Assembly: GCA_030390025.1 (NCBI GenBank)
Contig: CM059452.1
Span: forward strand, 8,370,001 to 8,434,000
Direction of reading: 5' to 3'
DNA from: Squalus acanthias
Lineage: Eukaryota
DNA length: 64,000 nucleotides
The position numbers were made by a program, and so were the translations under genes. Positions 6,502 to 64,000 of this stretch are shown here, in pieces. Each line of letters starts with the position of its first letter. Positions within the stretch are counted from its first letter, which is position 1. The notes beneath the pieces were generated by a model, which had not been told where the DNA came from, searched no databases, and saw only the letters and a list, made by a program, of their open reading frames with translations.

Positions 6502-7452
6502 ATGGAGTTTGGGCTTTTCGTTGTTTGGGGCCTAACGACGTTGTTATTCGGTTGGTTTATTTATTTACACAGCTGCGTCTGTTTGTCCATTCCACTATTG
6601 ACACCACTGTCTGCTAGTCAGCGACCTCTAGGTCTGCCTAGTTCTCTCTCTCTCTGTCTCTCAGTCCCCCCACCCCTCTCTCTCTCTCTCTCTCTTTGTT
6701 TCTCTCTCTCGTTCTCTCTCTCTGTCTTTCTCTTTGCCTCTCTCTCTCTCGGTCTCCCTCCCTCTCTTCTATTATCGATCTCTATGTCTATCCATCTGTC
6801 TGTCTAATTGTCTGTCTGTCTCTGTCCGTCTCTCTGACTGTCTGTCTACCTGTCTATCTGCCTGCTTTTCTGTTGGTCCCTCTGTATCTATGTCTGTCCC
6901 TCTCCCTATCTTTCTGCCTTTCAGTCTGTCTATATGCCTCTCTGTCTGACTGTCTGTTTATCAACCTGTCCATCTATCTTTATCTAGCCATTAAACCGAT
7001 TCTGTCTCGTTCTGTCCCTTTGTCTCCCTGTGTATTCACAGAGAGATAGACAGATATATTCTTAAAGAATGAGAAACGTGTAATCAGTTCTTCTCTGTGC
7101 TTCCATTGGTAACCAGGAATGTTTTCTGCGGGACTGAGTTCTGGAGACTCCGTCGGGCAGTGACCAACAGAAGCCCAATATCTGGAAGGAACCTCGATGA
7201 GTATTAATTGTAACTATTCAACCTCAGATTCGATTTATTCCCTGCAGCTTTACCGTCAGAGCCAGAACAAGGCTCCGACTTTTCTAATTCAGTCACATTC
7301 CTTTGGAAAGGACGAAGTCAACGGTCGTTTCTCTGTTATTCTGGAAAAGTCTAAAACTACTAGTGTTTTCACCCTGACTGAGCTGCAGCTCGCTGACAGT
7401 GCCGTGTACTACTGTGTACTACTGTGGTCTCTGGACACCTCGTACAGTGACC
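6502..7452 (+). pseudogene. TRAV: TCR V pseudogene V5 (GLSSGDSV family)
   Basis: Leader 6502-6550 MEFGLFVVWGLTTLLF; CT-rich intron; acceptor AG mutated near 7130; TGA at 7161; heptamer lost, nonamer acagtgacc kept; paralog of intact V15. Confidence 0.9.
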
Positions 7453-7494
7453 GTTTTCTGTGAGATCAGCTCAAAGGAGATACTTCAAACTCAG

Positions 7495-7508
7495 CCACCA
7501 GGTGGCGC
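7495..7508 (+). promoter_or_regulatory. CTCF-binding motif 3' of the V5 RSS
   Basis: ccaccaggtggcgc matches the CTCF core consensus. Confidence 0.65.
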
Positions 7509-23276: not shown

Positions 23277-23822
23277 ATGTTTGATGGGACAGTGTAGAGG
23301 GAGCTTTACTCTATATCTAACCCGTGCTGTACCTGCCCTGGCAGTGTTTGATGGGACAGTGTAGAGGGAGCTTTACTCTATATCTAACCCGTGCTGTACC
23401 TGCCCTGGGAGTGTTTGATGGGACAGTGTAGAGGGAGCTTTACTCTGTATCTAACCCGTGCTGTACCTGCCCTAGGAGTGTTTGGTGGGACAGTGTAGAG
23501 GGAGCTTTACTCTGTATCTAACCCGTGCTGTTCCTGTGCTGGGAGTGTTTGATGGGACAGTGTAGAGGGAGCTTTACTCTGTATCTAACCCGTGCTGCAC
23601 CTGCCCTGGGAGTGTTTGATGGGACAGTGTAGAGGGAGCTTTACTCTGTATCTAACCCGTGCTGTTCCTGTGCTGGGATGTCTTTGATGGGACAGTGTAG
23701 AGGGAGCTTTACTCTGTATCTAACCCGTGCTGTACCTGCCCTGGGAGTGTTTGATGGGACAGTGTAGAGGGAGCTTTACTCTGTATCTAACCTATGTTGT
23801 TCCTGACTGGGAGTGTTTGATG
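23277..23822. repeat. 67-bp minisatellite, about 8 copies
   Basis: Unit gtgtttgatgggacagtgtagagggagctttactctgtatctaacccgtgctgtacctgccctggga. Confidence 0.95.
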
Positions 23823-35041: not shown

Positions 35042-35056
35042 AGCGCCACCTGGTGG
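35042..35056 (-). promoter_or_regulatory. CTCF-binding motif about 41 bp 3' of the V15 nonamer
   Basis: Minus strand ccaccaggtggcgct. Confidence 0.65.
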
Positions 35057-35135
35057 CCGGGTTTAAGCAGCTTCTATGAGCTGATCTCACAGAACACGGT
35101 TACTGTACGAGTGTCCCGAGGCCCTTCTCACTGTG

Positions 35136-35945
35136 GGCCTCAGTGCACAGTAGTACACGGCGCTGTCAGCGAGCTGCAGCTCAGTCACGGTGAAAACAGC
35201 GACAGTTTTCGACTTTTCCAGAATGACAGAGAAACGGCCGTTAACTTCGTCCTTTCCAAAGGAATGTACTCGAATTATGACAGTGGGAGCCTTGTTCTGG
35301 TTCTGACGATAAAGCTCGAGGTAGTAGTTCGGTTCGGAGGTTGAATAGTTGCAATTAATACTCATCGAGGTTCCTTCCGGATATTGTGCTTCTGTTGGCG
35401 ATTGATCGACGGAGTCTCCAGAACTCAGTCCTGTAGAAAACATTCCTGGTTACCCATGGATACAGAGAGAAGAACAGATCACCCGTTTCTCTTTCTTTAA
35501 CAATACATCTGACTATCTCTCTGTGTGTACACAGGTGACAAAGAGAAAGAAAGAGAAAGCATCAGATAAATGACTAGATATAGATAGACAGGCAGGTGGA
35601 TTACCAGACAGATAGACAGAGAGTAAGACAGACAGAGAGGCAGCGAGACAGACAGACAGCAGGGGGACAAAGAGAAAAACAGGCCGACAGGCAGATATAC
35701 AGACAGACGAAGGACAGAGAGCGAGAGAGACAGACAGTGAGAGATACACACATAAACAGACAGACAAGTAGAGAGACAGGTGGATAGACAATTAGACAGA
35801 TAGGTGGGCAGACCTGGGATCGATGAACAGAGGACACTTGTGTCAATAGTGGAATGGACAGACAGACACAGATGTATAAATAAATAAACCAACCGAATAA
35901 CAGCGTTGTTAGGCCCCAAATAACGAAAAGCCCAAACTCCATCAT
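35136..35945 (-). CDS. TRAV: TCR alpha/delta V gene V15, intact ORF (GLSSGDSV family; conserved Trp replaced by Leu)
   Basis: Leader 35945-35894; V exon 35430-35136 (..INCNYS..LELYRQ..DSAVYYCALRP); RSS cacagtg 35135-35129, 22 bp, acagtaacc. Confidence 0.9.
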
Positions 35946-37232: not shown

Positions 37233-37566
37233 ATGCTCCGGATTTACAGAGTTTCCCTGCTGATTTACACTCTGATCTGCACGGATGTGAGCGGTGAAGA
37301 TGAGGTGGAGCAGCTCCCTCGGCGGGTGGTTGTTAGTGAAGAGGGAATCGTGTCCATCAACTGCTCCGCTACCGCTGGGTTTAACGTCCTGCACTGGTAC
37401 AGACAGAACCCGGATCAGACCCTCCAGCATCTGGTGATGGCCACAAGCGGGACCGATCAACACGGGAGGATCACTGCTTCAATCGGGGGAGGCAATAAAC
37501 TCAGTGCCCTGACTGTGAGAGACGCGCGAGTGACAGACAGCGCCACCTATCTCTGCGCCGTGAGCC
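37233..37566 (+). CDS. TRAV: TCR alpha/delta V gene V16, single-exon leader+V, apparently functional
   Basis: Continuous ORF MLRIYRVSLLIYTLICT-DVSGEDEVEQ..INCSATAGFNVLHWYRQ..DSATYLCAVS; RSS cacagtg 37567-37573, 23 bp, acagaaacc. Confidence 0.93.
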
Positions 37567-38393
37567 CACAGTGTGACAAACAGGCGGAGAGTCCGCACAG
37601 AAACCTGCCCCGAGGGGGAGCGCCGCTCTGCTGTGTTTGGAGTAACGGATTGGGAGGGGCCCGGTTATAATAATCGGAGGACAGAGGGAATGAACACAGA
37701 AAAATAATAGGAAATAGAGAAGAGAGAGTTAAAGAAATTCTGAAATGAAGAGATTTTGAAACACAGACAGAGGAAAACAAAGCGAAGGCACGAAAGAAAG
37801 AATGAGAGAAAGAGAAAAATCAATGTAATAATACGTGTAGTGGACAGCAAATTAGGAAAGGAGGGAAAAAGAAATGAAAGAAAGTGAGAAATAATGAGTG
37901 AGAAACATAAATCTTAAAGTTAAGAGAAAGCCATAAAGAAAGAGATTCAGAAATAAAGTAAAATTTCCCTTCCCTTTAAGCTCATTCATATTATCCTTCC
38001 ACCTATTTCACAGTTAATTTGTCTTAACCGCCTCTCCCAAAACCCGGACGCTGGAAAGTTCGCCAGAGATAAACTCACACTTTACTCAATCTATTATCCT
38101 GACAGTGTAAAGTTCTCAGAGTGACCGCCAGAGGGCGCCGTGGTCACATGTTTCTGGCCGTTACCAACTGGAAATGATGGAGACAAAGCTTGCAGTAACA
38201 CTGCCCGCGGCAGCCCCGCCCACAGCTTCCGTCTGCTGCTCTCGCTTTAACCCGCCTTCTGTTATCGGAGAGCTTACTGCCTCTGTTACTTTTTTGGCAT
38301 TGGTTGGATCAGCAGTGCAGTGCGGCGGGGATCTGTATTTCTGCTCCGACAGAGGATTTCCAGGACTGCAGAGTTACAGACTCAGGGAGCGTC

Positions 38394-41416: not shown

Positions 41417-41848
41417 ATGTATTACTCGGTACAAGTGAATGTATCACTCGTTATTCTGGTGCTGCTACCATGTAGGTACAGGAGCTGTGCTCAATAACCC
41501 GCAGTGTTTGTTTTATTCACGTTGCTCCAGGTGTTTTATTATCTGAATGTTTTTACAGGTCGATGTCTCTCGGACCGAGTGCTGCAGTCTCCCGCTGCGA
41601 TAACAGTCCGGAGCGGGGATTCGGTGCAGATAAACTGCAGCTATGACATGTCCAGCATTTACGCCATGCACTGGTACAAACAGAGACCCAGTCAGGGACT
41701 GGAGTGGGTAATAAGGCGAATATCAGCTGGCAAAGAGAGAAGGGACCGATTTGATTTGGATCTTTCCACTGCGGACAAACGCGGCCAATTGGTCATTGAG
41801 AGCACGGAGAGCGCGGATACCGCGGTGTATTACTGTGCGATAAAGCCG
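41417..41848 (+). CDS. TRAV: TCR alpha/delta V gene V18, apparently functional
   Basis: Leader 41417-41471 MYYSVQVNVSLVILVLLP; V exon 41559-41848 (..INCSYD..MHWYKQRPSQGLEWV..DTAVYYCAIKP); RSS cacactg 41849-41855, 23 bp, acaaaaacc. Confidence 0.93.
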
Positions 41849-44319: not shown

Positions 44320-44512
44320 NNNNNNNNNNNNNNNNNNNNNNNNNNNNNNNNNNNNNNNNNNNNNNNNNNNNNNNNNNNNNNNNNNNNNNNNNNNNNNNNN
44401 NNNNNNNNNNNNNNNNNNNNNNNNNNNNNNNNNNNNNNNNNNNNNNNNNNNNNNNNNNNNNNNNNNNNNNNNNNNNNNNNNNNNNNNNNNNNNNNNNNNN
44501 NNNNNNNNNNNN
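44320..44512. other. Assembly gap (N run)
   Basis: About 193 N. Confidence 1.
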
Positions 44513-48248: not shown

Positions 48249-49038
48249 CACAGTGACAGGAACCAGAGGGAGCCCCGTACAAACACACTGCCGGAATGTG
48301 ACAAGGACAACTGGATAGCGGGCAGTGTGGGGAGAAACGGGGACTGTCAGTACTTCTCACAGGAGAGTGTCCGTGTAAAAACTGACAAATCAATCGCTAT
48401 CCAACTAACAGTACAGAACATGAAACATCATGTTTATTATTAATAAAAATAATCGTGTTGCTAATTTGATAATAAGGTATTCGATGGGACGGTGCTTCCA
48501 ATCCCTGTTCATGTAATGGGCACCTCAACTTTCAAACATAGTGAAACAAATATAAACCAGTTCTCATTCTGTGTCAGAATCGCACTCAGACCTGGCGCTC
48601 CAGTCGGCAGGAAATGAACTGAACGGAGGGAACACATTCAGTGACGATGTAATAAACCATTGAGAAGTCAAAACACCTTCAGAACAAAGAAGTCTCGGCT
48701 GAACTCTGACCCCGCGAGACTCCCATTCCCCAGCTGGTGCGCAAACTCAGAGAAAACTGTCCAGAAAACAGGCAAAAGAGCAACAGCCAATAGTCTGAAG
48801 ATGAAGGTGGCAGTGATTCAGGAGAGACAGTTCCCAGTGAGTAACAGGGAAAACAACGCGGAAACTGCACAGACTGAACCCAACCGACAAATGAGAGACT
48901 TTGGGAACAGTTCTCAGGATGGCCGGAACCGCAAACAGCACAAAGTGAGCCTTATATCCGGCTTCAGCAGGCGGAGCCTCTGATCTACAAAGCGGCGGGA
49001 GTTTCTGTACCAGGGTTTAACTGGTTTCCATCAGTGTG

Positions 49039-53368: not shown

Positions 53369-55911
53369 CAGGATAATGAAACAGTTTGGGTAGAGATTAG
53401 GAATAATAAGGGGAAGAAAACACTGGTGGGCGTAGTATATAGGCCTCCTAATAGTTGCAACTCTGTTGGAAGAAGTATTAATCAGGAAATAGTTGGGGCA
53501 TGTAATAAGGGAACAGCGATAATTATGGGGGATTTTAACTATCATATTAACTGGACAAATCAAATTGGGCAGGGCAGCCTTGAGGAAGAGTTTATTGAGT
53601 GTCTTAGGGATGGATTTCTTGAGCAGTATGTAACTGATCCTACAAGGGGGCAAGCAACCTTGGACCTGGTACTGTGTAATGAGTCAGGATTAATTAATAA
53701 TGTCCTAGTTAAGGATCCCCTTGGAATGCGTGACCATAACATGGTTGAATTCCATATCCAATTAGAGGGTGAGAAGGTTGGTTCTCAAACAAGCGTACTG
53801 AGCTTGAATAAAGGAGACTATGATGGCATGAGAGCAGAATTGATTAAAGTGGACTGGGAAAATAGATTAAAGGGTAAGACGGTACATGAGCAGTGGTGTT
53901 CATTCAAGGAGTTATTTTACAACTTTCAAAATAAATATATTCCACTGAGGAAAAAAGGGTGTAAAAGAAATGACAGCCATCCATGGCTAAGTAAAGAAAT
54001 TAAAGAAAGTATCCAACTAAAAACAAGGACATATAAGGTAGCCAAAGTTAGTGGGAGGATAGAAGATTGGGAAGTCTTCAAAGACAACAAAAAGTAACTA
54101 AAGGATTGATTAAGAAAGGGAAAATAGACTATGAAAATAAATTAGCAAAAAATATAAAAACAGATAGCAAGAGTTTCTATAGTTATATAAAAAGAAAAAG
54201 GGTGGTTAAGGCAAACGTAGGTCCCTTAGAGGATGAGACCTGGAAATTAATGGTGGGAAACATGGAGATGGCAAAAATGCTGAACAAATATTTTGTTTCA
54301 GTCTTTACGGTAGAGGACACTAAGAATATCCCAACACTGGACAAACAGGGGGCTCTAGTGGGGGAGGAGCTAAATACGATTAAAATCACTAAGGAATTGG
54401 TACTCAGTAAAATAATGGGACTCAAGGCGGATAAATCCCCTGGACCTGATGGCTTACATCCTAGGGTCTTGAGGGAAGTGGCAGTAGGAATTGTGGATGC
54501 TTTGGTAATAATTTTCCCAAACTCCCTGAACTCAGCAAAGGTCCCGGCAGATTGGAAAACTGCTAATGTAACAACCTTATTTAAAAAGGGTTGTAGGCAG
54601 AAGGCTGGAAATTATAGACCAGTTAGCCTAACATCTGTGGTGGGTAAAATTTTGGAGTCTATTATTAAGGAGACAGTAACGGAACATTTAGATAAACATA
54701 ATTTAATAGGACAAAGTCAGCATGGCTTTATGAAGGGGAAGTCATGTCTGACAAATTTGCTCGAGTTCTTTGAGGAAATAACGTACAGGGTGGATAAAGG
54801 GGAACCAGTGGATGTAGTGTATTTAGACTTCCAGAAGGCATTCGACAAGGTGCCACATAAAAGATTAGTACTCAAGATAAAAAATCACTGGATTGGGGGT
54901 AATATTCTGGCATGGGTGGAGGATTGGTTATCTAACAGGAAGCAGAGAGTTGGGATAAATGGTTCATTCTCGGACTGGCAATCAATACAATATTGGAAAA
55001 TGTGAGGTTATGCACTTTGGCAGGAAAAATCAGAGAGCAAGTTATTATCTTAATGGCGAGAAACTGGAAAGTACTGCAGTACAAAGGGGCCTGGGGGTCT
55101 TGGTGCAAGAAAATCAAAAAGTTAGTATGCAGGTGCAGCAGGTGATCAAGAAAGCCAATGGAATGTTGGCTTTTATTGCTAGGGGGATAGAATATAAAAA
55201 CAGGGAGGTATTGCTGCAGTTGTATAGGGTATTGGTGAGACCGCAACTGGAGTACTGCATACAGTTTTGGTGTCCATACTTAAGAAAAGACATACTTGCT
55301 CTCGAGGCAGTACAAAGAACGTTCACTCGGTTAATTCCGGGGATGAGGGGGTGGACATACGAGGAGAGTTTGAGTAGATTGGGACTCTACTCATTGGAGT
55401 TCAGAAGAATGAGAGGCGATCTTATTGAAACATATAAGATTGTGAAGGGGCTTGATCGGGTGGACGCGGTGAGGATGTTCCCAATGATGGGTGAAACTAG
55501 AACTAGGGGACATAATCTTAGAATAAGGGGCTGCTCTTTCAAAACTGAGATGAGGAGAAACTTTTTCACTCAGAGGGTAGTAGGTCTGTGGAATTTGCTA
55601 CCCCAGGAAGCTGTGGAAGCTACAACATTAAATAAATTTAAAACAGAAATAGACAGTTTCCTAGAAGTAAAGGGAATCAGGGGTTACGGGGAGCGGGCTG
55701 GAAATTGGACATGAGTTTGAGTTCGGATCGGTCAAGGCCCTGTGGGTGGCGGAGTGGGCCCAGGGGCTGAGTGGCCGGGTCCTGCTCCTGCTTCTTGTGT
55801 TCTTTAGAGTTGAGGTTGGATCAGATCAGCCATGATCTCATTGAATGGCGGAGCAGGCTCGAGGGGCCGATTGGCCTACTCCTGCTCCTATTTCTTATGT
55901 TCTTATGTTCT
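53369..55911 (+). mobile_element. CR1 LINE nested in the minus-strand CR1, with an internal RT deletion
   Basis: VVYRPP..GDFN; YRPVSLTS; DFQKAFDKV; (ttcttatg)n tail; tatat on both flanks. Confidence 0.95.
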
Positions 55912-55942
55912 TATATGTAGATTAAAATCACTCATGATAACT

Positions 55943-56500
55943 CGCCACAGAATACCCAGCCTCTGACCTGCTCTTGTTGCCACAGTATTTATGTGGCTGG
56001 TCCAGTTAAGTTTATGGTCAACGGTGACCCCCCACCACCCCCCCAGGATATTGATGGTGGGGGATTCGGCGATGGTAATGCCATTGAATGTCAAGGGGTG
56101 GTGGTTAGACTGTCGCTTGTTGGAGATAGTCATTGCCTGGTCTTGTTGCATGCGGGCATGGACTGCTTCATTTTCTGAGGAGTTGTGAATGGTGCTGAAC
56201 ATTGTGCAGTCATCAGCGAACATCCCCATTTCTGACCTTATGTTGGAGGGAAGGTCATTGATGAAGCAGCTGGAGATGGTTGGGCCTTGGACACTGCCCT
56301 GAGGAACTCCTGCAGCGATGTCCTGGGGCTTTGATGATTGACCTTCAACCACCACAACCATCTTCCTTTGTGCTAGGTATGACTCTAGCCAGTGGAGACT
56401 TTTCCCCCTGATTCCCATTGACTTCCCTTTTACTCGGGCTCCTTGATGCCACACTCGGTCAAATGCTGCCTTGATATCAAGGGCAGTCACTCTCACTTTC
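55943..56500 (-). mobile_element. LINE (CR1/L2 superclade) RT fragment
   Basis: LDIKAAFDRVWH..GVPQGS..FADD. Confidence 0.9.
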
Positions 56501-56538
56501 ATTCTGTTTCCATGGGAAACCAGGAATGTTTTCTGCAG

Positions 56539-56632
56539 AACTGAGTTCTGGAGACTCCTTCAAGCAGTGGCCAACAGAAGCCCAATATCTGGAAGGAACC
56601 TCAATGAGCATAAATTGTAACTTTTCAACGTC
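56539..56632 (+). pseudogene. GLSSGDSV-family V 5' fragment fused to the QDTVEQP-family 3' flank
   Basis: Acceptor then LSSGDSFKQWPTEAQYLEGTSMSINCNFST; homology then jumps to the post-RSS flank. Confidence 0.85.
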
Positions 56633-59151
56633 CCTAGTGTACCAAAACGCCCACTGAGAGGGCGCTCTCACACCGATAACCAGAAGCAATAATTCAGCCT
56701 CCACAGTGAGAGTCACACGGACCTCCTTAAAAGTACAAAAAAACACAGCACTCAACAAGAACAGGTGAGGTCCCCTGGCCGAATTATATTAGTTTGTGAT
56801 TTCAACTCGCATTTATACTAAAAATGAACTTCAGCAATCATGTCTGTGGTTCCACAACTCACCTTTTGTCTTTTGATGTAATTTCCGTGCCTGCCTGTCT
56901 CTTCTCATCCCTTGTCTCCACTCTTTACTAATCGTATGGACTTTCTTCTTCCAGTCTTTAGTTTAACGATATAAAACCTTTACTGCTGCATGGCATATTA
57001 ATTCAGAACCGCTCTAACCCAGCTTCCCATAAACAGGAACTGCAGACAGGTCAGTGAATAATGTTAAGATCAGCTCCGAGAAGAGGTTGCTGACAGGGCC
57101 AGGAACCTCCTGCTGGTCGCTCCGTTAATGGGACAGGATCTGGTTCCCATATTCTGCCTGTGTGTGTTATTTCATCTCGTGTATTCCTTCAAAACCAATA
57201 CTTAATGTATTGGGGTGCTCGGGAAATCCTCCGACCCATTACTCTATTTTAGTTTCACTATATTTAGATGACACTTTCCAAGCTTGAAAACAGAGGTGTT
57301 GGAAACCCACAACCGAATGGGAGAGGACATGAAAGAGAAAATTAGTTGAATGTTTCGGGAGATCTGTGGAGAAAATAGAGAGATTTCTGATCTCTTTCGC
57401 TATTCTTGCTGTTCCGGTCACTGGTTGCCTCATTGAACTTCCGTGCGTCAGTTAACCTGCAATAAATCTGACCAAGTGCTATTGGCCTGTAAGGAGAACT
57501 CTGACTGTGTGGCAGTTTCCCCGAGGGAGGCTGTAATAAATTGCTATTCAGTGGTTCAGTTGGCTCACACCCTGTCAGTGATTTAAGCAGCCATGAAGGA
57601 CAGTGATTCCCACAATGCACAGCTGGCCAGAATAGGCCCAATGTGGACCACGGGCCGTGCTGCTCCCTGGGAGCACTGTTCGCACATGCGCAACTCGCCA
57701 ACCGCTTCAATTATTGTTGTCTGTATCTTTATTTCTGTCTCATATTTTCTCCTTTTTATTAAGAAAGGGAGACCGTTTCTTTTGTGGGAATTGAAGTCAC
57801 ACGTCACACCGCACGTCACACAAACATGGCCGTCACCGCTTTGCCCTGCACTGGATGACGCCACAATGCTTTTCGCATGTCACAGCACCGCGATTGGCTG
57901 TTTTTCACATTCATTGAGGGTCAGAGGTCACGGGCAGTCTCCAGGCTCCGGTCAGCGCTAAAGATTCCGCGTGTGTGCAGCCTATGACCCCTGACCCAGG
58001 GCTGTGACCCTGGGGGGTCAGCTCGGAAAGTCTTCAATGGGCCCTGCACCACCCGATATTCTCGCAGCCTGGGGATAGGATACAGAGCCGGGAGACACAG
58101 CGATGGTGGCTGAAGGTATTTGTCGCTTTGAGGGGAGGGAGAGAAATTGGGGCAGAGACATAGTTTAAACAGCAACTCCATCCATTTGCAATGTTCCTTC
58201 TCAGCCCTTCAGAAGGGCCGCCTAATTCATCCGTTCCTCAACCCGATCATATATTCAACCACAGGAGACCTCGCGCCTGGACTCCAGGAGCTCAGAGGGA
58301 AAGCAGCACTGCATCAGAAGGAGAATGCCAGAAGATACTCGGGTCTGGCCAGAAACCTCTGGAGATGTTCCCGGGGCGGGGAGGCATCGAAAGAGCCCGA
58401 GGATCCGGTTAAGGACGTGGAGCAAAACTACAGGGAAACAGGGATCAGAGATCTGAAGGTCACTGGCGGTACACAGTAGTGATGTTCACTGAGTTCATGG
58501 AGATGGTACAAGAGGGAATGGAGCAGAGCAGGGAGAAAGGTCGTCAGGGATACAGGAGACAGATGGTCAGGGTAAATGGGTGTGGCTCAGATTGGAGAAG
58601 GGTTGGAAGTGGTTACCCCAGTGCTGGGCCTACTCTTTCATTGGTCTGTGTGGACCATTTGGACTCGGGACTCCATTAAAGGGTCTAATCCAAAACAAAA
58701 AATACATTCTATAGCGCCCTCCCCGAGAGGAGGGCTACACTCGCTCACTTGGCCTGAACAAAACTAGAACGATATTCCATCAGAATTTGATTTTGTCCGA
58801 CTGTCACACAACCTGTGTCCAGCAGTGACCAAATATACCTGAGGACACCGCGTGATCCTAATCCCCTCTCCCTCAAATACAATCTCTCCTTCTTTCCTCT
58901 CTGCCCTGGGTGTCTGTGTGCGTATACACCAGAATAGGTGGAGAGAAAGAGTGAATGTGTAACAGGGAAGTTCGAGAGTCTGTGTTTATAACAGAGAAGT
59001 TGGAAACAGAATCTCTGTGTTTATAACAGTAAAGTGAAGAGTGCCTGAGTGTGTATAACAGAAAAGCTGGAGAGAGAGCCTGTGTGCCGGATAGGCCCCA
59101 GACTCTGAGAATCATTTCCAGGGTTTGTGCTCCCCAGTGTGTCTGTGTCAG

Positions 59152-59352
59152 ATATCTAACAAGTGTGCAGCTGCCGTGGGAGTGTTTGATGGGACAGTGT
59201 AGAGGGAGCTTTACTCTGTATCTAACCCATGCTGTACCTGCCCTGGGAGTGTTTGATGGGACAGTGTAGAGGGAGCTTTACTCCGTATCTAACAAGTGTG
59301 TACCTGCTCTGGAAGTGTTTGATGGGACAGTGTAGAGGGAGATTTACTCTGC
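59152..59352. repeat. 67-bp minisatellite, about 3 copies
   Basis: Same unit as 23277-23822. Confidence 0.9.
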
Positions 59353-60168
59353 CATGTACTGTAATGCTCTTTATTAGAACCTGGCATGTCACTGTTACAG
59401 ACCATAATATTAGAGAAGACTGCGTGGTGCGCCTGGTCGCTGTTGGTCGCTATGCAGTCATTCCGCCTCTGGGTCTTGACATAAAAAGGCACGGGTAAAG
59501 GTGTCTTTACTCTGAAGGGGCACTATGTGGCGCAGTGGCTCCTTAACCGAAGGGACTTGGGTTTAAACACAACCCAGACAGGACGGGTGAAAAATACCTG
59601 TCAGGGAAATAAAACAAAGTGTGATAGGGAAAATGGAGCGGTATGGAGCAGCCTTGGAGAAAGGAATTCAGCAAAGTCCAAGTTAGTCAATTTATCATTC
59701 CAGATTTATTAACAATTTCACAGAGAACAATTTACAGTGAAGTTTTTAAAAAGTTAACACAAAGTGAATATAACAACAGAGCGTCACATTGAGACCTGAA
59801 CACAGGCGGTCTGAGCTGCCAGTTATCTGTACAACTGTAACAGACACCAGAGGGAGAGAAAACAGGGGCTCTACATAAAGGGAAGGGAACAATTGTGAAT
59901 TACGAATGAGAAAAGTGACTTATTTACACATGAAATATTCAAACAACGGTGAAACTCTAAGATTCATTTACATTATAGCCACGATTATCTCACACATTTC
60001 AAACAGAGAGGCGGAAATCCCGGTTATGATTTTCTCAGCTACAGATTCGGATCTATTAACTGAAGGCATTTGACTCTGAGAATCACCAAGAGGATATATT
60101 TTATTTTCAGGACACAGAGATGTTAATAAACAGATGAGGAAAATCCACGGCGTCCGAAATTCAACCGT

Positions 60169-60177
60169 TCACTTGAT
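60169..60177 (-). CDS. IGHM: Immunoglobulin heavy-chain TM2 (cytoplasmic) exon, IK-stop
   Basis: ccctcttttacag|ATC AAG TGA, 140 nt downstream of the TM1 donor; AATAAA near 60100. Confidence 0.8.
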   Translation of the reverse strand: MK

Positions 60178-60317
60178 CTGTAAAAGAGGGATAAAAGAAT
60201 GAAGCAGAGATTTAGTGGTTTGGGGCATTTATCTCAGGGTTTTTATCAATGAAACTTTTAGAGATTTGTCAAACCGCTTCAGTCAGATCGAAGTGTGAGT
60301 GGATTGAATCTTCTCAC

Positions 60318-60445
60318 CTTCACTAGAGTGACGGCAGCGCTGTAGGCCATGCTCAGGAAGAACAGGATGATGAATGTGGAAGCGGTTGTCCAGATGTTGC
60401 CGCTCTCTTCCTCATAGTCTTCAATCAAGATGTGGTCTGAGGAAT
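60318..60445 (-). CDS. IGHM: Immunoglobulin heavy-chain (IgM-type) transmembrane exon TM1
   Basis: cccgtag| (D)SSDHILIEDYEEESGNIWTTASTFIILFFLSMAYSAAVTLVK |gtgag; acidic spacer and CART motif; 128 nt, phase 1 to phase 0, no stops. Confidence 0.92.
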
Positions 60446-61094
60446 CTACGGGGATGTAGAGGCGGAAATATATTCAGATCCTTTATTAATCCAAGATATC
60501 ATATTATTATTATATATTCTCTTCTTTTCCTTAAGGTATTAGTTTGTTCTCTAATTGAATTTTCAATGTATATCTTGAGTTAAGTTAATCTCTCTCAGCA
60601 ATCTATCTCTGTTCCTAACTCCACAGTCGCTCTTCCTTTTTGATCCTCCTATAGTCTGTGCTGGAAAAAACGACAGTTTTTTCTTCAATGTCACACGCTA
60701 ATTGATTTTGCATCAATTTCGTACAATCTATCATTCGGGAATTATGTGATGAAATATCGAGGGAGGTTTACTGATTGATATCGATTATTTTAACGATAGG
60801 TTTAGATAGCTACTTATTTGGAGACTGTCAATGGGGCTGGGTAAGAGATCAGATGTGAGTTATAATCTTGTTTATTTATTTGTTATGGCAGTGCTCTGAA
60901 CATAATTAACTTGTATCAGTTTCCAACAAGAACATTGATTCAGTGTATGTGTAGGACCAGAATAGAGAAATGTGAGATGTTATGGTATCAGGAATTATTC
61001 ATTCAGAACAATCGTTGGAAACTGTGCTCGTTCAAAAAGTGCATTTTAATTCTACAATCGTCTATAGCCTGAGGTTTTTTCGCGCATTCGTATT

Positions 61095-61875
61095 TGCGTA
61101 TGTGTGTATAACAATCTCTTGTTTTGTTTTAGTCTGTGTTTGTGTGTTAATGTGTGTGTTGCTGTGTAAGTGTGTGTGCGTGTGTTTATGTGTAATTGTG
61201 TGTGTGCTGATGTTTAAGTTTGCGTGTTTGTGTAATTCTATATATGGGTATTTATGTGTAAGTGTGTGATTATGTGTAAGTGTGCGTGTATTTTTGTCAG
61301 TTTGTGTATGTTTATGTGTAAGTCTTTGTATAAGTGTGTGTGTTTATTTGTAATTGTGTGTGTGTTTGTGTGTAAGTTTATTTGTAAATGTGTTTATGTT
61401 TAATTGTGTGTTTGTTTTTTGTGTATGTGCGTCCATGTGTGTGTTTATGTTTATGTTTAGGGTTATGTGGAAGTGTTTGTGTATGTTCAGGTGTAAGCGT
61501 GTGAGTGTTTCTGTGTAATTGTGTGTTTGTTTGTAAGTGTGTGTTTGTGTGTGTGTGTTTGTGTTGAGTGTGAGTTTATGGGTGTGTAAGTGTGTGTGTG
61601 TTAATGCATGTGTTTGTGTGTGTTTTGTTTAAGGGTGTGCGCGTGTGTATTTCCGGTACTGTTCAAAGTTTCAGAGATTACCAATAACTGGGTCTGAAAA
61701 TGACGGTGTGTATTATATTCTGGGTATGTGTAATATTCTATGTCAATATGTTAATGCGTGTGTTTATGTGTATGTCTGTGTGTGTTTATGTGTAAGTGTG
61801 CACTTACACAAAACACACACACTTACACAAAATTGCAAACGCACTGACACATAAACACACACACACTCACTTTAC
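61095..61875. repeat. Degenerate (TG)n / (CA)n microsatellite
   Basis: Direct inspection. Confidence 0.9.
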
Positions 61876-62204
61876 ACGCATTCTTCTCCGCTCTGTGTAA
61901 ATGTGTTCTGTGTGAGACGCAATGTGACGTCAACCGATGGGCCTCAAACCATCAGCGACAGAACGGTGAGAAACCCGCAGAAGATTCAATCACCAGTTCA
62001 AATTTGGACTATTAAAATTCAATCTGTTAGTTTATGAATAACAGGGACAGATTTACCCCAAACACTAGTTAAAGATAAGTTGTTGAATAAATATTTATTT
62101 TACAATATGATTCTCATCCGGCAACTTTAACGTTTTTAGACTGTGAGTTAAAGCTGACTTTTTACTGATGGCAACTGAGTTCATACAATAGAGATTGGTT
62201 CACC

Positions 62205-63420
62205 TCCCCTCTCTCTGGTGGGCGAGTGGGGGTACAGTGGCTTCACAATTACCCTTTCCCCTCTCTGGTGGGGGAGTGGGGGGTACAGTCGGTTAACAAT
62301 TGCCCTTTCCCCTCTCTCTGGTGGGGGAGTGGGAGGTACAGTGGGTTAACAATTGCCCTTTCCCCTCTCTCTGGTGGGGGAGTGGGAGGTACAGTGGGTT
62401 AACAATTGCCCTTTCCTCTCTCTCTGGTGGGGAGTGTGGGTACAGTGGGTTAACAATTGCCCTTTCCCCTCTCTCTGGTGGGGGAGTGGGGGTACAGTGT
62501 GTTAACAATTGCCCTTTCCCCTCTCTCTGGTGGGGAGTGTGGGTACAGTGGGTTAACAATTGCCCTTTCTCCTCTCTCTGGTGGGGGAGTGGGAGGTACA
62601 GTGGGTTAACAATTGCCCTTTCCCCTCTCTCTGGTGGGGAGTGTGGGTACAGTGGGTTAACAATTGCCCTTTCCCCTCTCTCTGGTGGGGGAGTGTGGGT
62701 AGAGTGGGTTAACAATTGCCCTTTCCACTCTCTCTGGTGGAGGAGTGGGAGGTACAGTGGGTTAACAATTGCCCTTTCCCCTCTCTCTGGTGAGGGAGTG
62801 GGGGTACAGTGGGTTAACAATTGCCCTTTCCCCTCTCTCTGGTGGGGGAGTGGGGGGTACAGTGGGTTAACAATTCCCCTTTCCCCTCTCTCTGGTGGGG
62901 GAGTGGGGGGTACAGAGGGTTAACAATTGCCCTTTCCCCTCTCTCTGGTGGGGGAGTGGGGGGTACAGTGGGTTAACAATTCCCCTTTCCCCTCTCTCTG
63001 GTGGAGAAGTGGGTGTACAGTGGGTTAACAATTGCCCTTTCCCCTCTCTCTGGTGGGGGAGTGGGGGTACAGTGGCTTAACAATTGCCCTTTCCCCTCTC
63101 TCTGGTGGGGGAGTGGGGGTACAGTGGGTTAACAATTGCCCTTTCCCCTCTCTCTGGTGAGGGTGTGGGAGGTACAGTGGGTTAACAATTGCCCTTTCCC
63201 CTCTCTCTGGTGGGGGAGTGGGGGTACAGTGGGTTGACAATTGCCCTTTCCCCTCTCTCTGGTGGGGGAGTGGGGGTACAGCGGGTTAACAATTGCCCTT
63301 TCCACTCTCTCTGGTGGGGAAGTGGGGGGTACAGTGGGTTAATAATTGCTCTTTCCCCTCTCTCTGTAGGGGGAGTGGCATGTACAGTGGGTTAACAATT
63401 GCCCTTTCCCCTCTCTCTGC
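62205..63420. repeat. About 52-bp G-run minisatellite, about 23 copies
   Basis: Unit gggttaacaattgccctttcccctctctctggtgggggagtgggggtacagt. Confidence 0.95.
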
Positions 63421-63554
63421 TGGCGCAGTGGGTTTACAGTTCGTTTTCGTGTGTGGCCTCATTTCAGGTCCCCGAGAGTGCGATGCTGCAAATAAAACTG
63501 GCCCCAATTCTGAAGGGATGGACAACACGAGAAACAGGGACACCGAGATCTAAA

Positions 63555-63665
63555 ATCCGGAAACGTCCATAATTATCGCTTTTTTCAACCTGAGTGAGCT
63601 GCCGTGTACTACTGTGCACTGAGGCCCACAGTGAGAAGGGCCTCGGGACTCCTCGTAGATTAACC
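63555..63665 (+). pseudogene. GLSSGDSV-family V 3' fragment with RSS
   Basis: ..AVYYCALRP, cacagtg 63627-63633, 23 bp, agattaacc; CTCF-like ccaccaggtgacgc at 63708; flank matches V5 and V15. Confidence 0.85.
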
Positions 63666-64000
63666 TTGTTCTGTGAGATCACCTTAAACGAGATTCTTTA
63701 AACCCGGCCACCAGGTGACGCTGACTGAGCGCGGATTCTCACCGCCCGTTACCTGATATCAACAATACTGACTGACACTTTCTCAATATAAATTAACGTA
63801 AAATTGCTTTTGATATCATATTTATGCTTATTAATGTTATACATTCAATTACAGTTTTATAATTTCAGAAGTTAGTGAAGTATAAACGAGATGTGCGCCT
63901 CCAGAACCTTGGGTTCGTTTGCCGTTTTGCTCTATTTCCCACCGCCAGTTACAGCCCCTGGTTTTAACCCACTTTACTGATGAAGATATCGTTAACTTTT

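What the first reader, a model, noticed from the sequence alone, without database searches (positions are those of the whole stretch)
60169..60445. Intact IgM-type transmembrane exons inside a TCR alpha/delta V array
Seen: a minus-strand 128-nt exon with good splice sites encoding (D)SSDHILIEDYEEESGNIWTTASTFIILFFLSMAYSAAVTLVK, a 140-nt intron, an IK-stop exon and a downstream AATAAA. It is absent from the ORF track. TCR V remnants flank it on both sides (56539 and 63555), and I see no CH exon in the 3.5 kb upstream. Established: this is the B-cell-receptor CART/CD79-docking anchor, recalled as very close to shark IgM TM. Shark TCR delta loci are known to hold IgH-type V segments, but I do not know of IgH TM exons there. 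Inference: either a fossil of an IgH cluster captured in the locus or a live module. Its phase-1 acceptor matches the phase-1 donors of leader, J and C exons, so a minus-strand transcript could give a TCR V domain on a BCR anchor, the mirror image of the known IgHV-TCR delta chimeras.
Basis: partly seen in the sequence, partly recalled or inferred. Interest (0 to 1): 0.92.

Follow-up and report, generated by a model that had tools for sequence, protein, structure and literature searches.

The report
Stray shark IgM membrane-exon cassette
The last two exons of a shark antibody (IgM) gene, the ones that anchor it in the B-cell membrane, sit alone among T-cell-receptor V genes and are most likely a young leftover copy of an antibody gene cluster, not a new kind of receptor part.

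Summary
A 128-nt phase-1 exon lies on the minus strand at 60445-60318, followed by a 140-nt GT..AG intron, then Ile-Lys-stop (60177-60169). The exon is mu-type: the closest relatives are shark and skate IgM membrane tails and the membrane mu chain of solved B-cell receptors.

No C-mu exon exists anywhere in the 64 kb. The cassette lies between two collinear halves of one broken TCR-type V gene, 56503-56633 and 63556-63704.

Two coded runs that behave as RNA contain the exact TM1-TM2 splice. Their contigs differ from the window by 1-3%, and no contig joins 60445 to anything in 60446-64000. So near-identical cassettes are expressed somewhere, and this copy is not shown to be. At that divergence a neutral copy still looks intact 66-87% of the time.

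Flajnik et al. 2025 (PMC12227049) already describe IgH miniclusters interleaved with TCR-alpha/delta-type V exons in elasmobranchs.

Best reading (0.62): a young 3' fragment of an IgM minicluster, without a gene. The scan's unchecked notes report similar orphan cassettes elsewhere in this genome (s1-889030, s1-889890). The chimeric "TCR V on a BCR anchor" idea has no support.

The parts
60318..60445 (-). TM1 exon (128 nt, phase-1 acceptor): acidic membrane-proximal stretch plus the mu-type transmembrane helix
   Evidence: AG at 60447-6, GT at 60317-6, 42 open codons. (22 hits, best 2.9e-10). (27-31 identical of 36-42 aligned to the seven shark and skate tails that follow a C-mu4). (membrane mu isoform of solved IgM BCRs, E 2.6e-7).
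60178..60317 (-). TM1-TM2 intron, 140 nt, GT..AG
   Evidence: One search shows the joint 60177|60318 skipping 140 nt with ends CT..AC on the + strand, in X6 (depth 116.9, 1 contig) and X16 (53.4, 1 contig).
60169..60177 (-). TM2 coding part: Ile-Lys-stop, the short cytoplasmic tail typical of IgM
   Evidence: The comparators end in VK, IE or IK-like tails.
59695..60168 (-). 3'UTR with two AATAAA signals (60105-60100 and 59710-59705). The distal one is probably the one used.
   Evidence: signals; contigs 59978-60177, 59874-60065 and 59695-59871 cross the first signal, and lower contig ends fall at 59695, 59707 and 59744.
60446..62170 (-). Sequence upstream of TM1 that behaves as C-mu4-to-TM1 intron of the cassette family. 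It includes a TG-rich microsatellite at about 61135-61640.
   Evidence: unspliced contigs cover 60351-61178 (X16, 22 differences in 828), 60366-61091 (X6, 10 in 726), 60336-60753 (X17, 11 in 418) and 61880-62170 (X6, 10 plus 1 indel in 292). One search gives the tandem repeats.
62205..63440 (.). 53-nt minisatellite, 23.7 copies, 92% matches. It lies between the cassette and the 3' V remnant.
   Evidence: Its translations hit no Ig family.
56503..56633 (+). 5' part of a broken TCR-type V gene (end of the leader intron to CDR1)
   Evidence: 87.0% over 131 nt to the V at 35336-35466. (89.1% over 128 nt to the V at 7098-7225).
63556..63704 (+). 3' part of the same V subfamily (FR3, with an internal deletion), then CACAGTG, a 23-nt spacer, a degenerate nonamer and the flank
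   Evidence: 76.4% over 165. (77.9% over 181 to 35044-35222, and 74.4% to 7400-7507). (sequence read).
56657..57061 (.). Sequence also found next to other V genes of the window (5 other copies, 76-92%). It shows that the interval between the V halves is a mosaic and not one clean insert.
59152..59351 (.). 66-67-nt tandem repeat (3 copies), also present at 23278-23822. Not part of the Ig piece.
   Evidence: One search shows contig depth of 2-4e5 on it.

Best explanation
This is the 3' end of an IgM (mu) heavy-chain minicluster that has been separated from its gene. It contains part of the C-mu4-to-TM1 intron, TM1, the 140-nt intron, TM2 and the 3'UTR with its poly(A) signals, about 2.5 to 5 kb in all. 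It lies in the elasmobranch region where IgH miniclusters and TCR-alpha/delta-type V genes are interleaved.

The copy is young or recently homogenised. It is only about 1-3% different from cassettes that are transcribed and spliced in the same organism, and that is why its frame and splice sites are still perfect. It has no promoter, V, J or C-mu exon of its own within reach. Most probably it does nothing, unless a minus-strand transcript happens to read in from beyond the window.

Shown here: the anatomy, the mu type, the absence of C exons in the window, the broken V halves on both sides, and the use of the TM1-TM2 splice in near-identical RNA. Inferred: that the piece was inserted or left behind inside a V gene, that the RNA comes from paralogous complete clusters, and that this copy is silent.
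For: (1) Anatomy and type. Searches give the exon structure. Searches show that shark and skate IgM tails following a C-mu4 are the closest (27-31 identical of 36-42), while delta-type second tails are the farthest (17-18 of 31-32). name the comparators: a Heterodontus Ig heavy-chain peptide, a skate 'Ig mu chain precursor' cluster, and Chiloscyllium and Scyliorhinus four-C-domain models. In one search, 6 of 8 PDB hits are the membrane mu isoform.

(2) No gene around it. 0 of 10 upstream minus-strand open segments hit an Ig family. With 10 of 10 heavy-chain queries, the only significant constant-part hit in 64 kb is TM1.

(3) Flanks. The two V fragments match the same two V genes best. They are on the same strand and collinear, with 113 nt of V missing between them.

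(4) RNA-like runs. The exact GT..AG joint is present in 2 of 4 runs. Coverage is confined to 59695-63283 and is zero in 63284-64000 in 4 of 4 runs. X6 and X16 carry different versions of the upstream intron, so a multi-copy family exists.

(5) Intactness is uninformative. The probability of staying intact under neutral substitution is 0.87, 0.77 and 0.66 at 1, 2 and 3% divergence.

(6) Context in print. IgH clusters with TCR-alpha/delta-type V exons between them are described in PMC12227049 (section 6).

(7) Unchecked notes of this scan list further IgM relics and orphan TM cassettes on this chromosome.
Against: A C-mu4 more than 3.5 kb upstream on the minus strand is therefore not excluded, and I found no figure for the normal C-mu4-to-TM1 distance.

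In X16 the spliced contig ends one letter before position 60347, where both letters are read. By my reading of a k=31 graph (recalled, not checked), this means a spliced RNA with the window's own pair of letters (Ala codon and Ile codon) exists. So this copy, or an identical one, may be expressed.

The interval between the V halves is a mosaic that includes V-array-like sequence. 'One V split by one insertion' is therefore too simple, and the two halves could in principle be separate fragments.

The runs are only guessed to be RNA and are contigs, in which 'a hole proves nothing'. Only 24 of 68 loose-end rows were displayed, so a loose end at 60446 may have gone unseen.
Confidence: 0.62

Rival explanations
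1. The cassette is the normal membrane end of a complete or nearly complete IgM gene on the minus strand. Its C-mu exons would lie just beyond the window's end, and a long C-mu4-to-TM1 intron would have picked up repeats and a V fragment.
For: The exons, splice sites and poly(A) signals are perfect. Only 3.5 kb upstream is visible. The X16 contig pattern suggests a spliced RNA with the window's own letters at 60347 and 60177 (inference). Unchecked notes place C-mu1/C-mu2, a JH and V elements 5-22 kb beyond the end.
Against: The V 3' remnant at 63556-63704 pairs with the 5' remnant at 56503-56633, which brackets the Ig piece. No contig lies on 63284-64000 in 4 of 4 runs, although the intron nearer TM1 is covered. 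The noted neighbour elements run NAR-like V-J, then an RSS array, then JH, then C-mu with rising coordinates. I read that as a plus-strand cluster pointing away from these exons; this is an inference from unchecked notes. Nothing was noted between 64000 and 69151.
Confidence: 0.15
2. A live module. Minus-strand transcripts from non-IgM exons (a TCR-type V, a NAR-like V-J or another Ig-superfamily exon with a phase-1 donor) would splice into 60445 and put a foreign domain on a CD79-docking anchor.
For: The acceptor is phase 1 like all Ig-superfamily exons. The region is known for chimeric products such as NARTCR and TAILV (PMC12227049, section 15). One bamboo-shark gene model (P0010) joins VH and C-mu1 directly to a TM tail, so short membrane forms are at least predicted.
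Against: No joint from 60445 to any place in 60446-64000 appears in 4 of 4 runs. No minus-strand V, J or C exon lies upstream in the window. Phase compatibility is generic. The spliced contigs seen differ from the window and fit ordinary IgM paralogues.
Confidence: 0.04
3. An assembly artefact. Reads from a true IgM cluster's 3' end were misjoined into the TCR V array at repeats such as the minisatellite, the microsatellite and the 66-nt repeat.
For: The piece is bounded by repeats. A family of 97-99% identical copies exists. The window has one N gap at 44320-44512.
Against: The stretch 60000-60500 is held nearly whole by many independent runs: 16 of 24 rows hold half or more of the words, from 10 studies, although that does not test the junctions. 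The window's version differs from each expressed version, as a separate genomic copy would. Unchecked notes describe several similar orphans.
Confidence: 0.06
4. The exons belong to another membrane Ig-superfamily gene of the same complex, for example UrIg2 or an IgW or IgNAR cluster, and not to IgM.
For: UrIg2, IgW and IgNAR all lie in the same complex, and gene predictors often miss TM exons there (PMC12227049, sections 6 and 7).
Against: All close matches are mu tails that follow a C-mu4 ending in ...VDKSS. Delta-type tails are clearly more distant. The Lys-Ile-Lys cytoplasmic end is the IgM pattern, whereas UrIg2 is described with a TM/cytoplasmic domain. No shark IgW, IgNAR or UrIg2 tail was available to compare.
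Confidence: 0.03

Closest known systems
Membrane exons (TM1/TM2) of cartilaginous-fish IgM miniclusters, e.g. the Heterodontus Ig heavy-chain membrane peptide (P0008) and the Chiloscyllium punctatum / Scyliorhinus torazame four-C-domain models (P0002, P0023-P0026)
   Same: Both have a phase-1 TM1 exon that would follow the internal C-mu4 donor after ...VDKSS, an acidic stretch, then WTTASTFI.LFFLS..YSAAVTLVK, and a two-codon TM2. Identity is 27-31 of 36-42 aligned residues.
   Different: Here no C-mu exon is found within 3.5 kb upstream or anywhere in the 64 kb, and broken TCR-type V fragments flank the piece. The residue before the conserved Tyr is Ala here, against Phe or Ser in the comparators.
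Elasmobranch antigen-receptor complex (IgM/IgW/IgNAR miniclusters linked to TCR-alpha/delta; Flajnik et al. 2025, PMC12227049)
   Same: Ig heavy-chain gene material and TCR-alpha/delta-type V exons are interleaved on one chromosome, with IgH-like V segments among the TCR V genes. The window has one at 41570-41845.
   Different: The sections I read describe whole V(D)JC clusters and V exons between them, not isolated membrane-exon cassettes. Its table S1 with coordinates could not be opened, because supplements are closed.
Human membrane mu chain in solved IgM B-cell-receptor complexes (8e4c, 8ema, 7xq8, 7xt6, 7wsp)
   Same: The helix aligns residue for residue over 32 positions, with WTTASTFI, LF.LS, YS and VTL identical. 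This is the helix that packs against CD79 in those complexes. The name 'CART motif' is recalled, not taken from a call.
   Different: About 450 million years of divergence, and no evidence that this copy is ever translated.
Ig heavy-chain pseudogenes and cluster relics in sharks (nurse shark Groups 6-8 pseudogenes; PMC2435157 and PMC5192425, passages only)
   Same: Non-functional members of a multi-copy minicluster family that turns over by duplication and decay.
   Different: The passages I saw describe those pseudogenes by their V-region defects. This item is a 3' fragment whose exons are still intact.

Membership tests
Ig mu heavy-chain membrane exons (TM1/TM2) | Two-exon layout: phase-1 acceptor, TM1 of about 125-130 nt, a short intron, a TM2 of two codons plus stop, and a poly(A) signal | tested here: met
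   128-nt exon, 140-nt GT..AG intron, Ile-Lys-stop, AATAAA at 60105 and 59710.
Ig mu heavy-chain membrane exons (TM1/TM2) | Sequence closer to mu membrane tails than to other isotypes | tested here: met
   shark and skate mu tails reach 27-31 of 36-42 identical (scores 145-164) against 17-18 of 31-32 (scores 91-98) for delta-type tails; mu E 2.6e-7 against gamma-1 E 9.7e-4. No shark IgW or IgNAR tail was available.
Ig mu heavy-chain membrane exons (TM1/TM2) | Conserved polar face of the helix (W-T-T-A-S-T-F ... Y-S ... V-T) as in solved IgM BCRs | tested here: met
   alignment to 8e4c_B and 8ema_A. All of these positions are identical.
Ig mu heavy-chain membrane exons (TM1/TM2) | The TM1-TM2 intron is removed in RNA | tested here: inconclusive
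   the exact joint is in X6 and X16 (2 of 4 runs). The X6 contig carries 60347 C>A, a second X6 contig reads Val for Ile at TM2, and the X16 contig has 3 differences in 200 nt of UTR. The feature is met for the cassette family and not assignable to this copy.
Functional IgM minicluster (L-V-D-D-J-Cmu1-4-TM1-TM2) | C-mu1 to C-mu4 exons upstream on the same strand | tested here: not met
   Within the window: 0 of 10 open segments with an Ig family, and no C-domain hit by tblastn with 10 queries. Beyond 64000 this is not testable with these tools.
Functional IgM minicluster (L-V-D-D-J-Cmu1-4-TM1-TM2) | TM1 spliced to the internal donor of C-mu4 in transcripts of this locus | not testable with these tools
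No joint from 60445 was found inside the laid stretch. X18 record 21 runs 20 letters past 60446 that do not lie on the window, and those letters were not shown.
TCR alpha/delta V array | Many V exons with 23-spacer RSS, on both strands, without J or C exons beside them | tested here: met
   13 V-domain motif matches plus 2 further V exons at RSSs. 7 heptamer-23(22)-nonamer signals. Endings are of the CALR, CAVS and CGLR type; no C exon.
TCR alpha/delta V array | V domains closer to TCR alpha/delta V than to Ig V | tested here: inconclusive
   TCR alpha and delta chains dominate the single-domain hits for the V at 35138-35449, but antibody scFv entries crowd both lists. One search found no named shark homologue.
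Processed (retrotransposed) copy of a membrane IgM mRNA | Introns absent, poly(A) tract at the 3' end | tested here: not met
   The 140-nt intron is present and upstream intron-like sequence is retained.

The most novel reading that the evidence does not exclude
The cassette is kept as a shared, free-standing 'membrane-anchor module' of the shark antigen-receptor complex. Minus-strand transcripts starting at non-IgM exons beyond the window (a TCR-type V, a NAR-like V-J or an orphan C exon) would splice into 60445 and display that domain on a CD79-coupled anchor. This would be the mirror image of the IgH-V/TCR-delta chimeras. The several orphan cassettes noted in this genome would then be a dispersed family of such modules and not debris.
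Probability: 0.04. Interest if true: 0.85.

Novelty: new member of a known kind. Interest (0 to 1): 0.3.

Why it matters
As a relic it is a small but concrete record of how the shark IgH/TCR-alpha/delta complex turns over: pieces of IgM miniclusters are copied into, or left behind in, the V array and break V genes there. If the other orphan cassettes noted by this scan hold up, the shared boundaries of the copied unit could show the mechanism, whether unequal exchange, inverted duplication or transposon-assisted capture. They could also give a timescale for cluster birth and death.

It also has a practical side. Such cassettes are 97-99% identical to the working ones, so they will attract RNA-seq reads and mislead gene models for membrane IgM.

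Only the unlikely live-module reading would change how antigen-receptor evolution is understood.

Tried and rejected

2. Finding an exact or closer protein. The word-indexed search with the 42-aa exon gave only the Heterodontus peptide. The search with P0002's tail gave 7 of 7 shark and skate candidates, none closer than about 75%. A V exon query gave nothing.

3. Normal C-mu4-to-TM1 distance. Two searches and passages of PMC2435157 and PMC5192425 give cluster spacing and the J-to-C-mu1 distance, not this figure.

4. One clean insertion into a V gene. Rejected as too simple, because 56657-57061, 57813-58056 and 58137-58391 resemble other parts of the V array.

5. Retrocopy. Rejected, because the introns are present.

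6. Classifying the V genes by PDB hits. Antibody scFv entries dominate the lists.

7. The search of earlier findings by sequence was blank.

8. Print status of orphan IgM membrane exons in a TCR V array. Searches found no paper describing them. Subscription papers and the supplements of PMC12227049 were not visible.

9. The joined TM1+TM2 model was not sent to any search. TM1 was searched alone, and TM2 (two codons) is too short to search.
Full report
WHAT IS THERE

On the minus strand an AG acceptor (60447-60446) follows a pyrimidine-rich tract. A 128-nt exon runs from 60445 to 60318. From its third base it reads SSDHILIEDYEEESGNIWTTASTFIILFFLSMAYSAAVTLVK without a stop. A GT donor follows at 60317-60316. 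The intron is 140 nt and ends in a long pyrimidine tract and AG. The next exon begins at 60177 with Ile-Lys-stop. AATAAA stands at 60105 and again at 59710.

IS IT MORE THAN CHANCE, AND WHAT TYPE IS IT

- phmmer with the 42-residue exon alone against 1.84 billion representative proteins gave 22 hits at E<=0.001, the best at 2.9e-10. The 20 whose sequence or source name I looked at are Ig heavy chains or fragments of them, matched at their membrane tails.
- Searching the 90%-clustered collection with the tail of the best shark model (P0002, residues 425-468) returned 7 of 7 candidates. These are Chiloscyllium punctatum and Scyliorhinus torazame Ig heavy-chain models and one transcript-derived protein that clusters with the little skate 'Ig mu chain precursor'.
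- In 6 of these 7 the tail follows a C-mu4 domain ending ...KSS (5 of them ...VDKSS). The next residue is completed by the first two bases of TM1, as it would be here. The seventh, P0010, joins VH and C-mu1 directly to the tail.
- The exon shares 27-31 identical residues over 36-42 aligned with the seven shark and skate tails that follow a C-mu4. It shares 17-18 of 31-32 with the delta-type second tails of long tetrapod models.
- The only short relative is the 43-residue Heterodontus Ig heavy-chain peptide, at 74%.
- Against solved structures, 6 of 8 hits are the membrane isoform of the human mu chain in IgM B-cell-receptor complexes (E 2.6e-7 to 2.2e-5). One is the gamma-1 membrane chain (9.7e-4). 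WTTASTFI, YS and VTL are identical in the alignment.
- The exon is therefore a mu-type membrane anchor. The names 'CART motif' and 'CD79 docking' are recalled. The tool result is the match to the mu chain of those complexes. No shark IgW, IgNAR or UrIg2 tail was available for comparison.

SURROUNDINGS

The window holds at least 15 V exons on both strands. Thirteen were found by a V-domain motif and two more at RSSs. There are seven heptamer-23(22)-nonamer signals, and the endings are of the CALR, CAVS and CGLR type. PDB matches of one V family are mostly TCR alpha and delta chains among single-domain entries, but antibody scFv entries crowd the lists.

No Ig or TCR constant exon exists in the window. 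0 of 10 minus-strand stop-free segments of 60 aa or more between 60446 and 64000 hit an Ig family. In a tblastn of 10 Ig heavy-chain models against all 64 kb, TM1 was the only significant match to a constant part (E 1.8e-15 to 1.8e-8). The VH parts of two models matched V exons, best at 41570-41845.

Upstream of TM1 lie about 0.7 kb of unique sequence, a TG-rich microsatellite, about 0.3 kb of unique sequence, and a 53-nt minisatellite of 23.7 copies at 62205-63440.

THE FLANKING V REMNANTS ARE TWO HALVES OF ONE V

- The V at 35060-35800 (minus) matches 56503-56633 with its nucleotides 335-465 (87.0%).
- The same V matches 63556-63704 with its nucleotides 579-741 (76.4%). Both matches are on the plus strand and in order, with 113 nt of V missing between them.
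- Each half also has the V at about 7098-7507 as its other best match.
- The 3' half keeps CACAGTG, a 23-nt spacer and a degenerate nonamer, and has an internal deletion.
- So the Ig piece sits inside what was once one V gene.
- The 6.9 kb between the halves is not one clean insert. 56657-57061 has five relatives next to other V genes of the window. 57813-58056 and 58137-58391 resemble sequence near 29.1-30.2 kb. 59152-59351 is a tandem repeat also found at 23.3-23.8 kb.
- The Ig-derived piece is therefore bounded between 58391-59695 on one side and 62170-63555 on the other, which makes it about 2.5-5 kb.

RNA EVIDENCE

- The stretch 60000-60500 is held by 20 of 24 listed runs from 10 studies, with coded organisms A to H.
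- I laid the four runs guessed to be RNA on 58500-64000. All four are kept as Logan contigs.
- They behave as RNA. Coverage is patchy: none on 58684-59051, 59420-59603 or 63284-64000 in X6, X16 and X18, and only one thin contig (depth 1.35) on 58868-59051 in X17. A joint with GT..AG ends on the minus strand is present.
- The joint 60177|60318, skipping exactly 140 nt, occurs in X6 (depth 116.9, one contig) and X16 (53.4, one contig). It was not seen in X17 or X18.

None of the displayed spliced contigs is identical to the window:
- The X6 contig carries 60347 C>A, which turns the Ala before the conserved Tyr into Ser, as in a Scyliorhinus model.
- A second X6 contig (depth 15.8) is drawn as a joint shifted by two places. 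That is what a copy reading Val in place of Ile at the first TM2 codon would give.
- The X16 contig has three differences in 200 nt of 3'UTR.

Unspliced contigs cover the sequence upstream of TM1 at 1.4% (X6, 10 of 726), 2.7% (X16, 22 of 828) and 2.6% (X17, 11 of 418) difference. X6 and X16 are labelled the same organism but differ from each other at many of these places. So there is a family of near-identical cassettes with their upstream introns, and different members dominate in different samples.

No contig joins 60445 to any place in 60446-64000. One X18 contig runs 20 letters beyond 60446 that do not lie on the window, as a splice to an exon outside the stretch would. Those letters were not shown, and only 24 of 68 loose-end rows were displayed.

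Contigs cross the first AATAAA and end at 59695-59744, just beyond the second. The usual 10-30 nt from signal to cleavage site is textbook knowledge.

One point stands against my reading. The X16 spliced contig stops at 60346, one letter short of where a splice branch alone would end it, and both letters are read at 60347. If Logan's graph uses 31-letter words (recalled), a spliced RNA with the window's own combination exists in X16. It could come from this copy or from an identical one.

DOES INTACTNESS MEAN FUNCTION

A simulation of neutral substitutions on the six splice-site bases, the frame and the stop gave a probability of remaining intact of 0.87, 0.77, 0.66, 0.50 and 0.26 at 1, 2, 3, 5 and 10% divergence (indels not modelled). 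At the 1-3% seen against expressed copies, an unconstrained copy would usually still look perfect. Differences per site in TM1 (1-2 in 128), the UTR (about 10 in 480) and the intron (1.4-2.7%) are too few to test constraint.

WHAT IS IN PRINT

Flajnik et al. [quoted passage not shown] Other V domains are intermediate between TCR and Ig.

So Ig heavy-chain gene material among TCR-type V genes is a described arrangement. Isolated membrane-exon cassettes are not mentioned in what I read, and the paper's two 'TM exons' passages concern UrIg2 models. Four searches found no paper describing orphan IgM membrane exons in a TCR V array. Table S1 of that paper, which lists coordinates, could not be opened. 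Nurse shark IgM pseudogenes and cluster spacing are mentioned in PMC2435157 and PMC5192425 (passages only).

NOTES OF THIS SCAN (unchecked; leads only)

- Beyond the window's end the notes list a NAR-like V-J at +5151, an RSS array at +9157, a JH at +12105, and a span from +5531 over 16.5 kb that ends at C-mu1/C-mu2.
- That order with rising coordinates suggests a plus-strand cluster, and the minus-strand TM exons would point away from it. This is my inference from titles and offsets, not from sequence.
- Other notes list a complete IgH cluster in the V array 1.68 Mb before this window, a JH plus lone C-mu4 relic 309 kb before, another orphan TM1+TM2 1.76 Mb beyond, and a palindrome of two TM cassettes on another piece.
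- If these hold, orphan pieces of IgM clusters are common in this genome.

VERDICT

The exons are real, mu-type and structurally perfect. They are best explained as a young, gene-less 3' fragment of an IgM minicluster lying inside a broken V gene of the Ig/TCR complex (confidence 0.62).

| Reading | Confidence |
|---|---|
| Complete minus-strand gene reaching beyond the window | 0.15 |
| Misassembly | 0.06 |
| Live chimeric module | 0.04 |
| Another isotype's exons | 0.03 |

I file it as a new member of a known kind, with interest 0.3. The joined TM1+TM2 model was not searched; only TM1 was.

Noticed in passing
window 41570-41845 (+), RSS to about 41888: An IgH-like V among the TCR-type V genes. 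It is the best tblastn target of shark VH parts (35.5%, E 1.9e-10). Its PDB best hits are antibody heavy-chain V domains, and its FR2 reads QGLEWV. The RSS is CACACTG, a 23-nt spacer, then ACAAAAACC. It fits the TAILV kind of segment named in PMC12227049.
   Followed up: partly
window 59153-59351 and 23278-23822: A 66-67-nt tandem repeat (3 copies and about 8 copies). Contigs of all four RNA-like runs pile on it at summed depth 2-4e5, with many different loose ends, so it is a very abundant dispersed repeat in transcriptomes.
   Followed up: no
window 62205-63440: A 53-nt minisatellite with 23.7 copies and 92% matches. It is open in several frames on both strands, which produces long spurious ORFs (up to 208 aa).
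   Followed up: partly
window 54067-55714 (+) and 55903-56502 (-): Two reverse-transcriptase (RVT_1) ORF fragments of LINE type in opposite orientation. The second ends exactly where the 5' V remnant begins, so the V lost its leader to a retroelement insertion.
   Followed up: partly
window 37233-37565 (+), RSS at 37567: An uninterrupted 111-codon ORF from Met through a leader-like stretch and a V domain to CAVS, followed by CACAGTG, a 23-nt spacer and ACAGAAACC. It is a V without a leader intron, as the scan's note s1-889255 says.
   Followed up: partly
window 60176-60272 (inside the TM1-TM2 intron): One contig of run X18 (coded organism B) lacks these 97 nt, with non-canonical ends, while keeping 45 nt of intron. 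This looks like a relative with a shorter intron rather than a splice.
   Followed up: no
protein P0010 (Chiloscyllium punctatum chiPu_0016370): A 276-aa gene model that joins VH and C-mu1 directly to a mu-type TM tail with no C-mu2-4. It is either a predictor's skip or a short membrane form or cluster variant.
   Followed up: no
window 48249 (+) V and 35135 (-) V: Two V exons with good RSSs lack canonical framework residues. The V at 48249 lacks the first Cys, and the V at 35135 has Leu in place of the conserved Trp of FR2. They are likely pseudogenes or atypical V genes.
   Followed up: no
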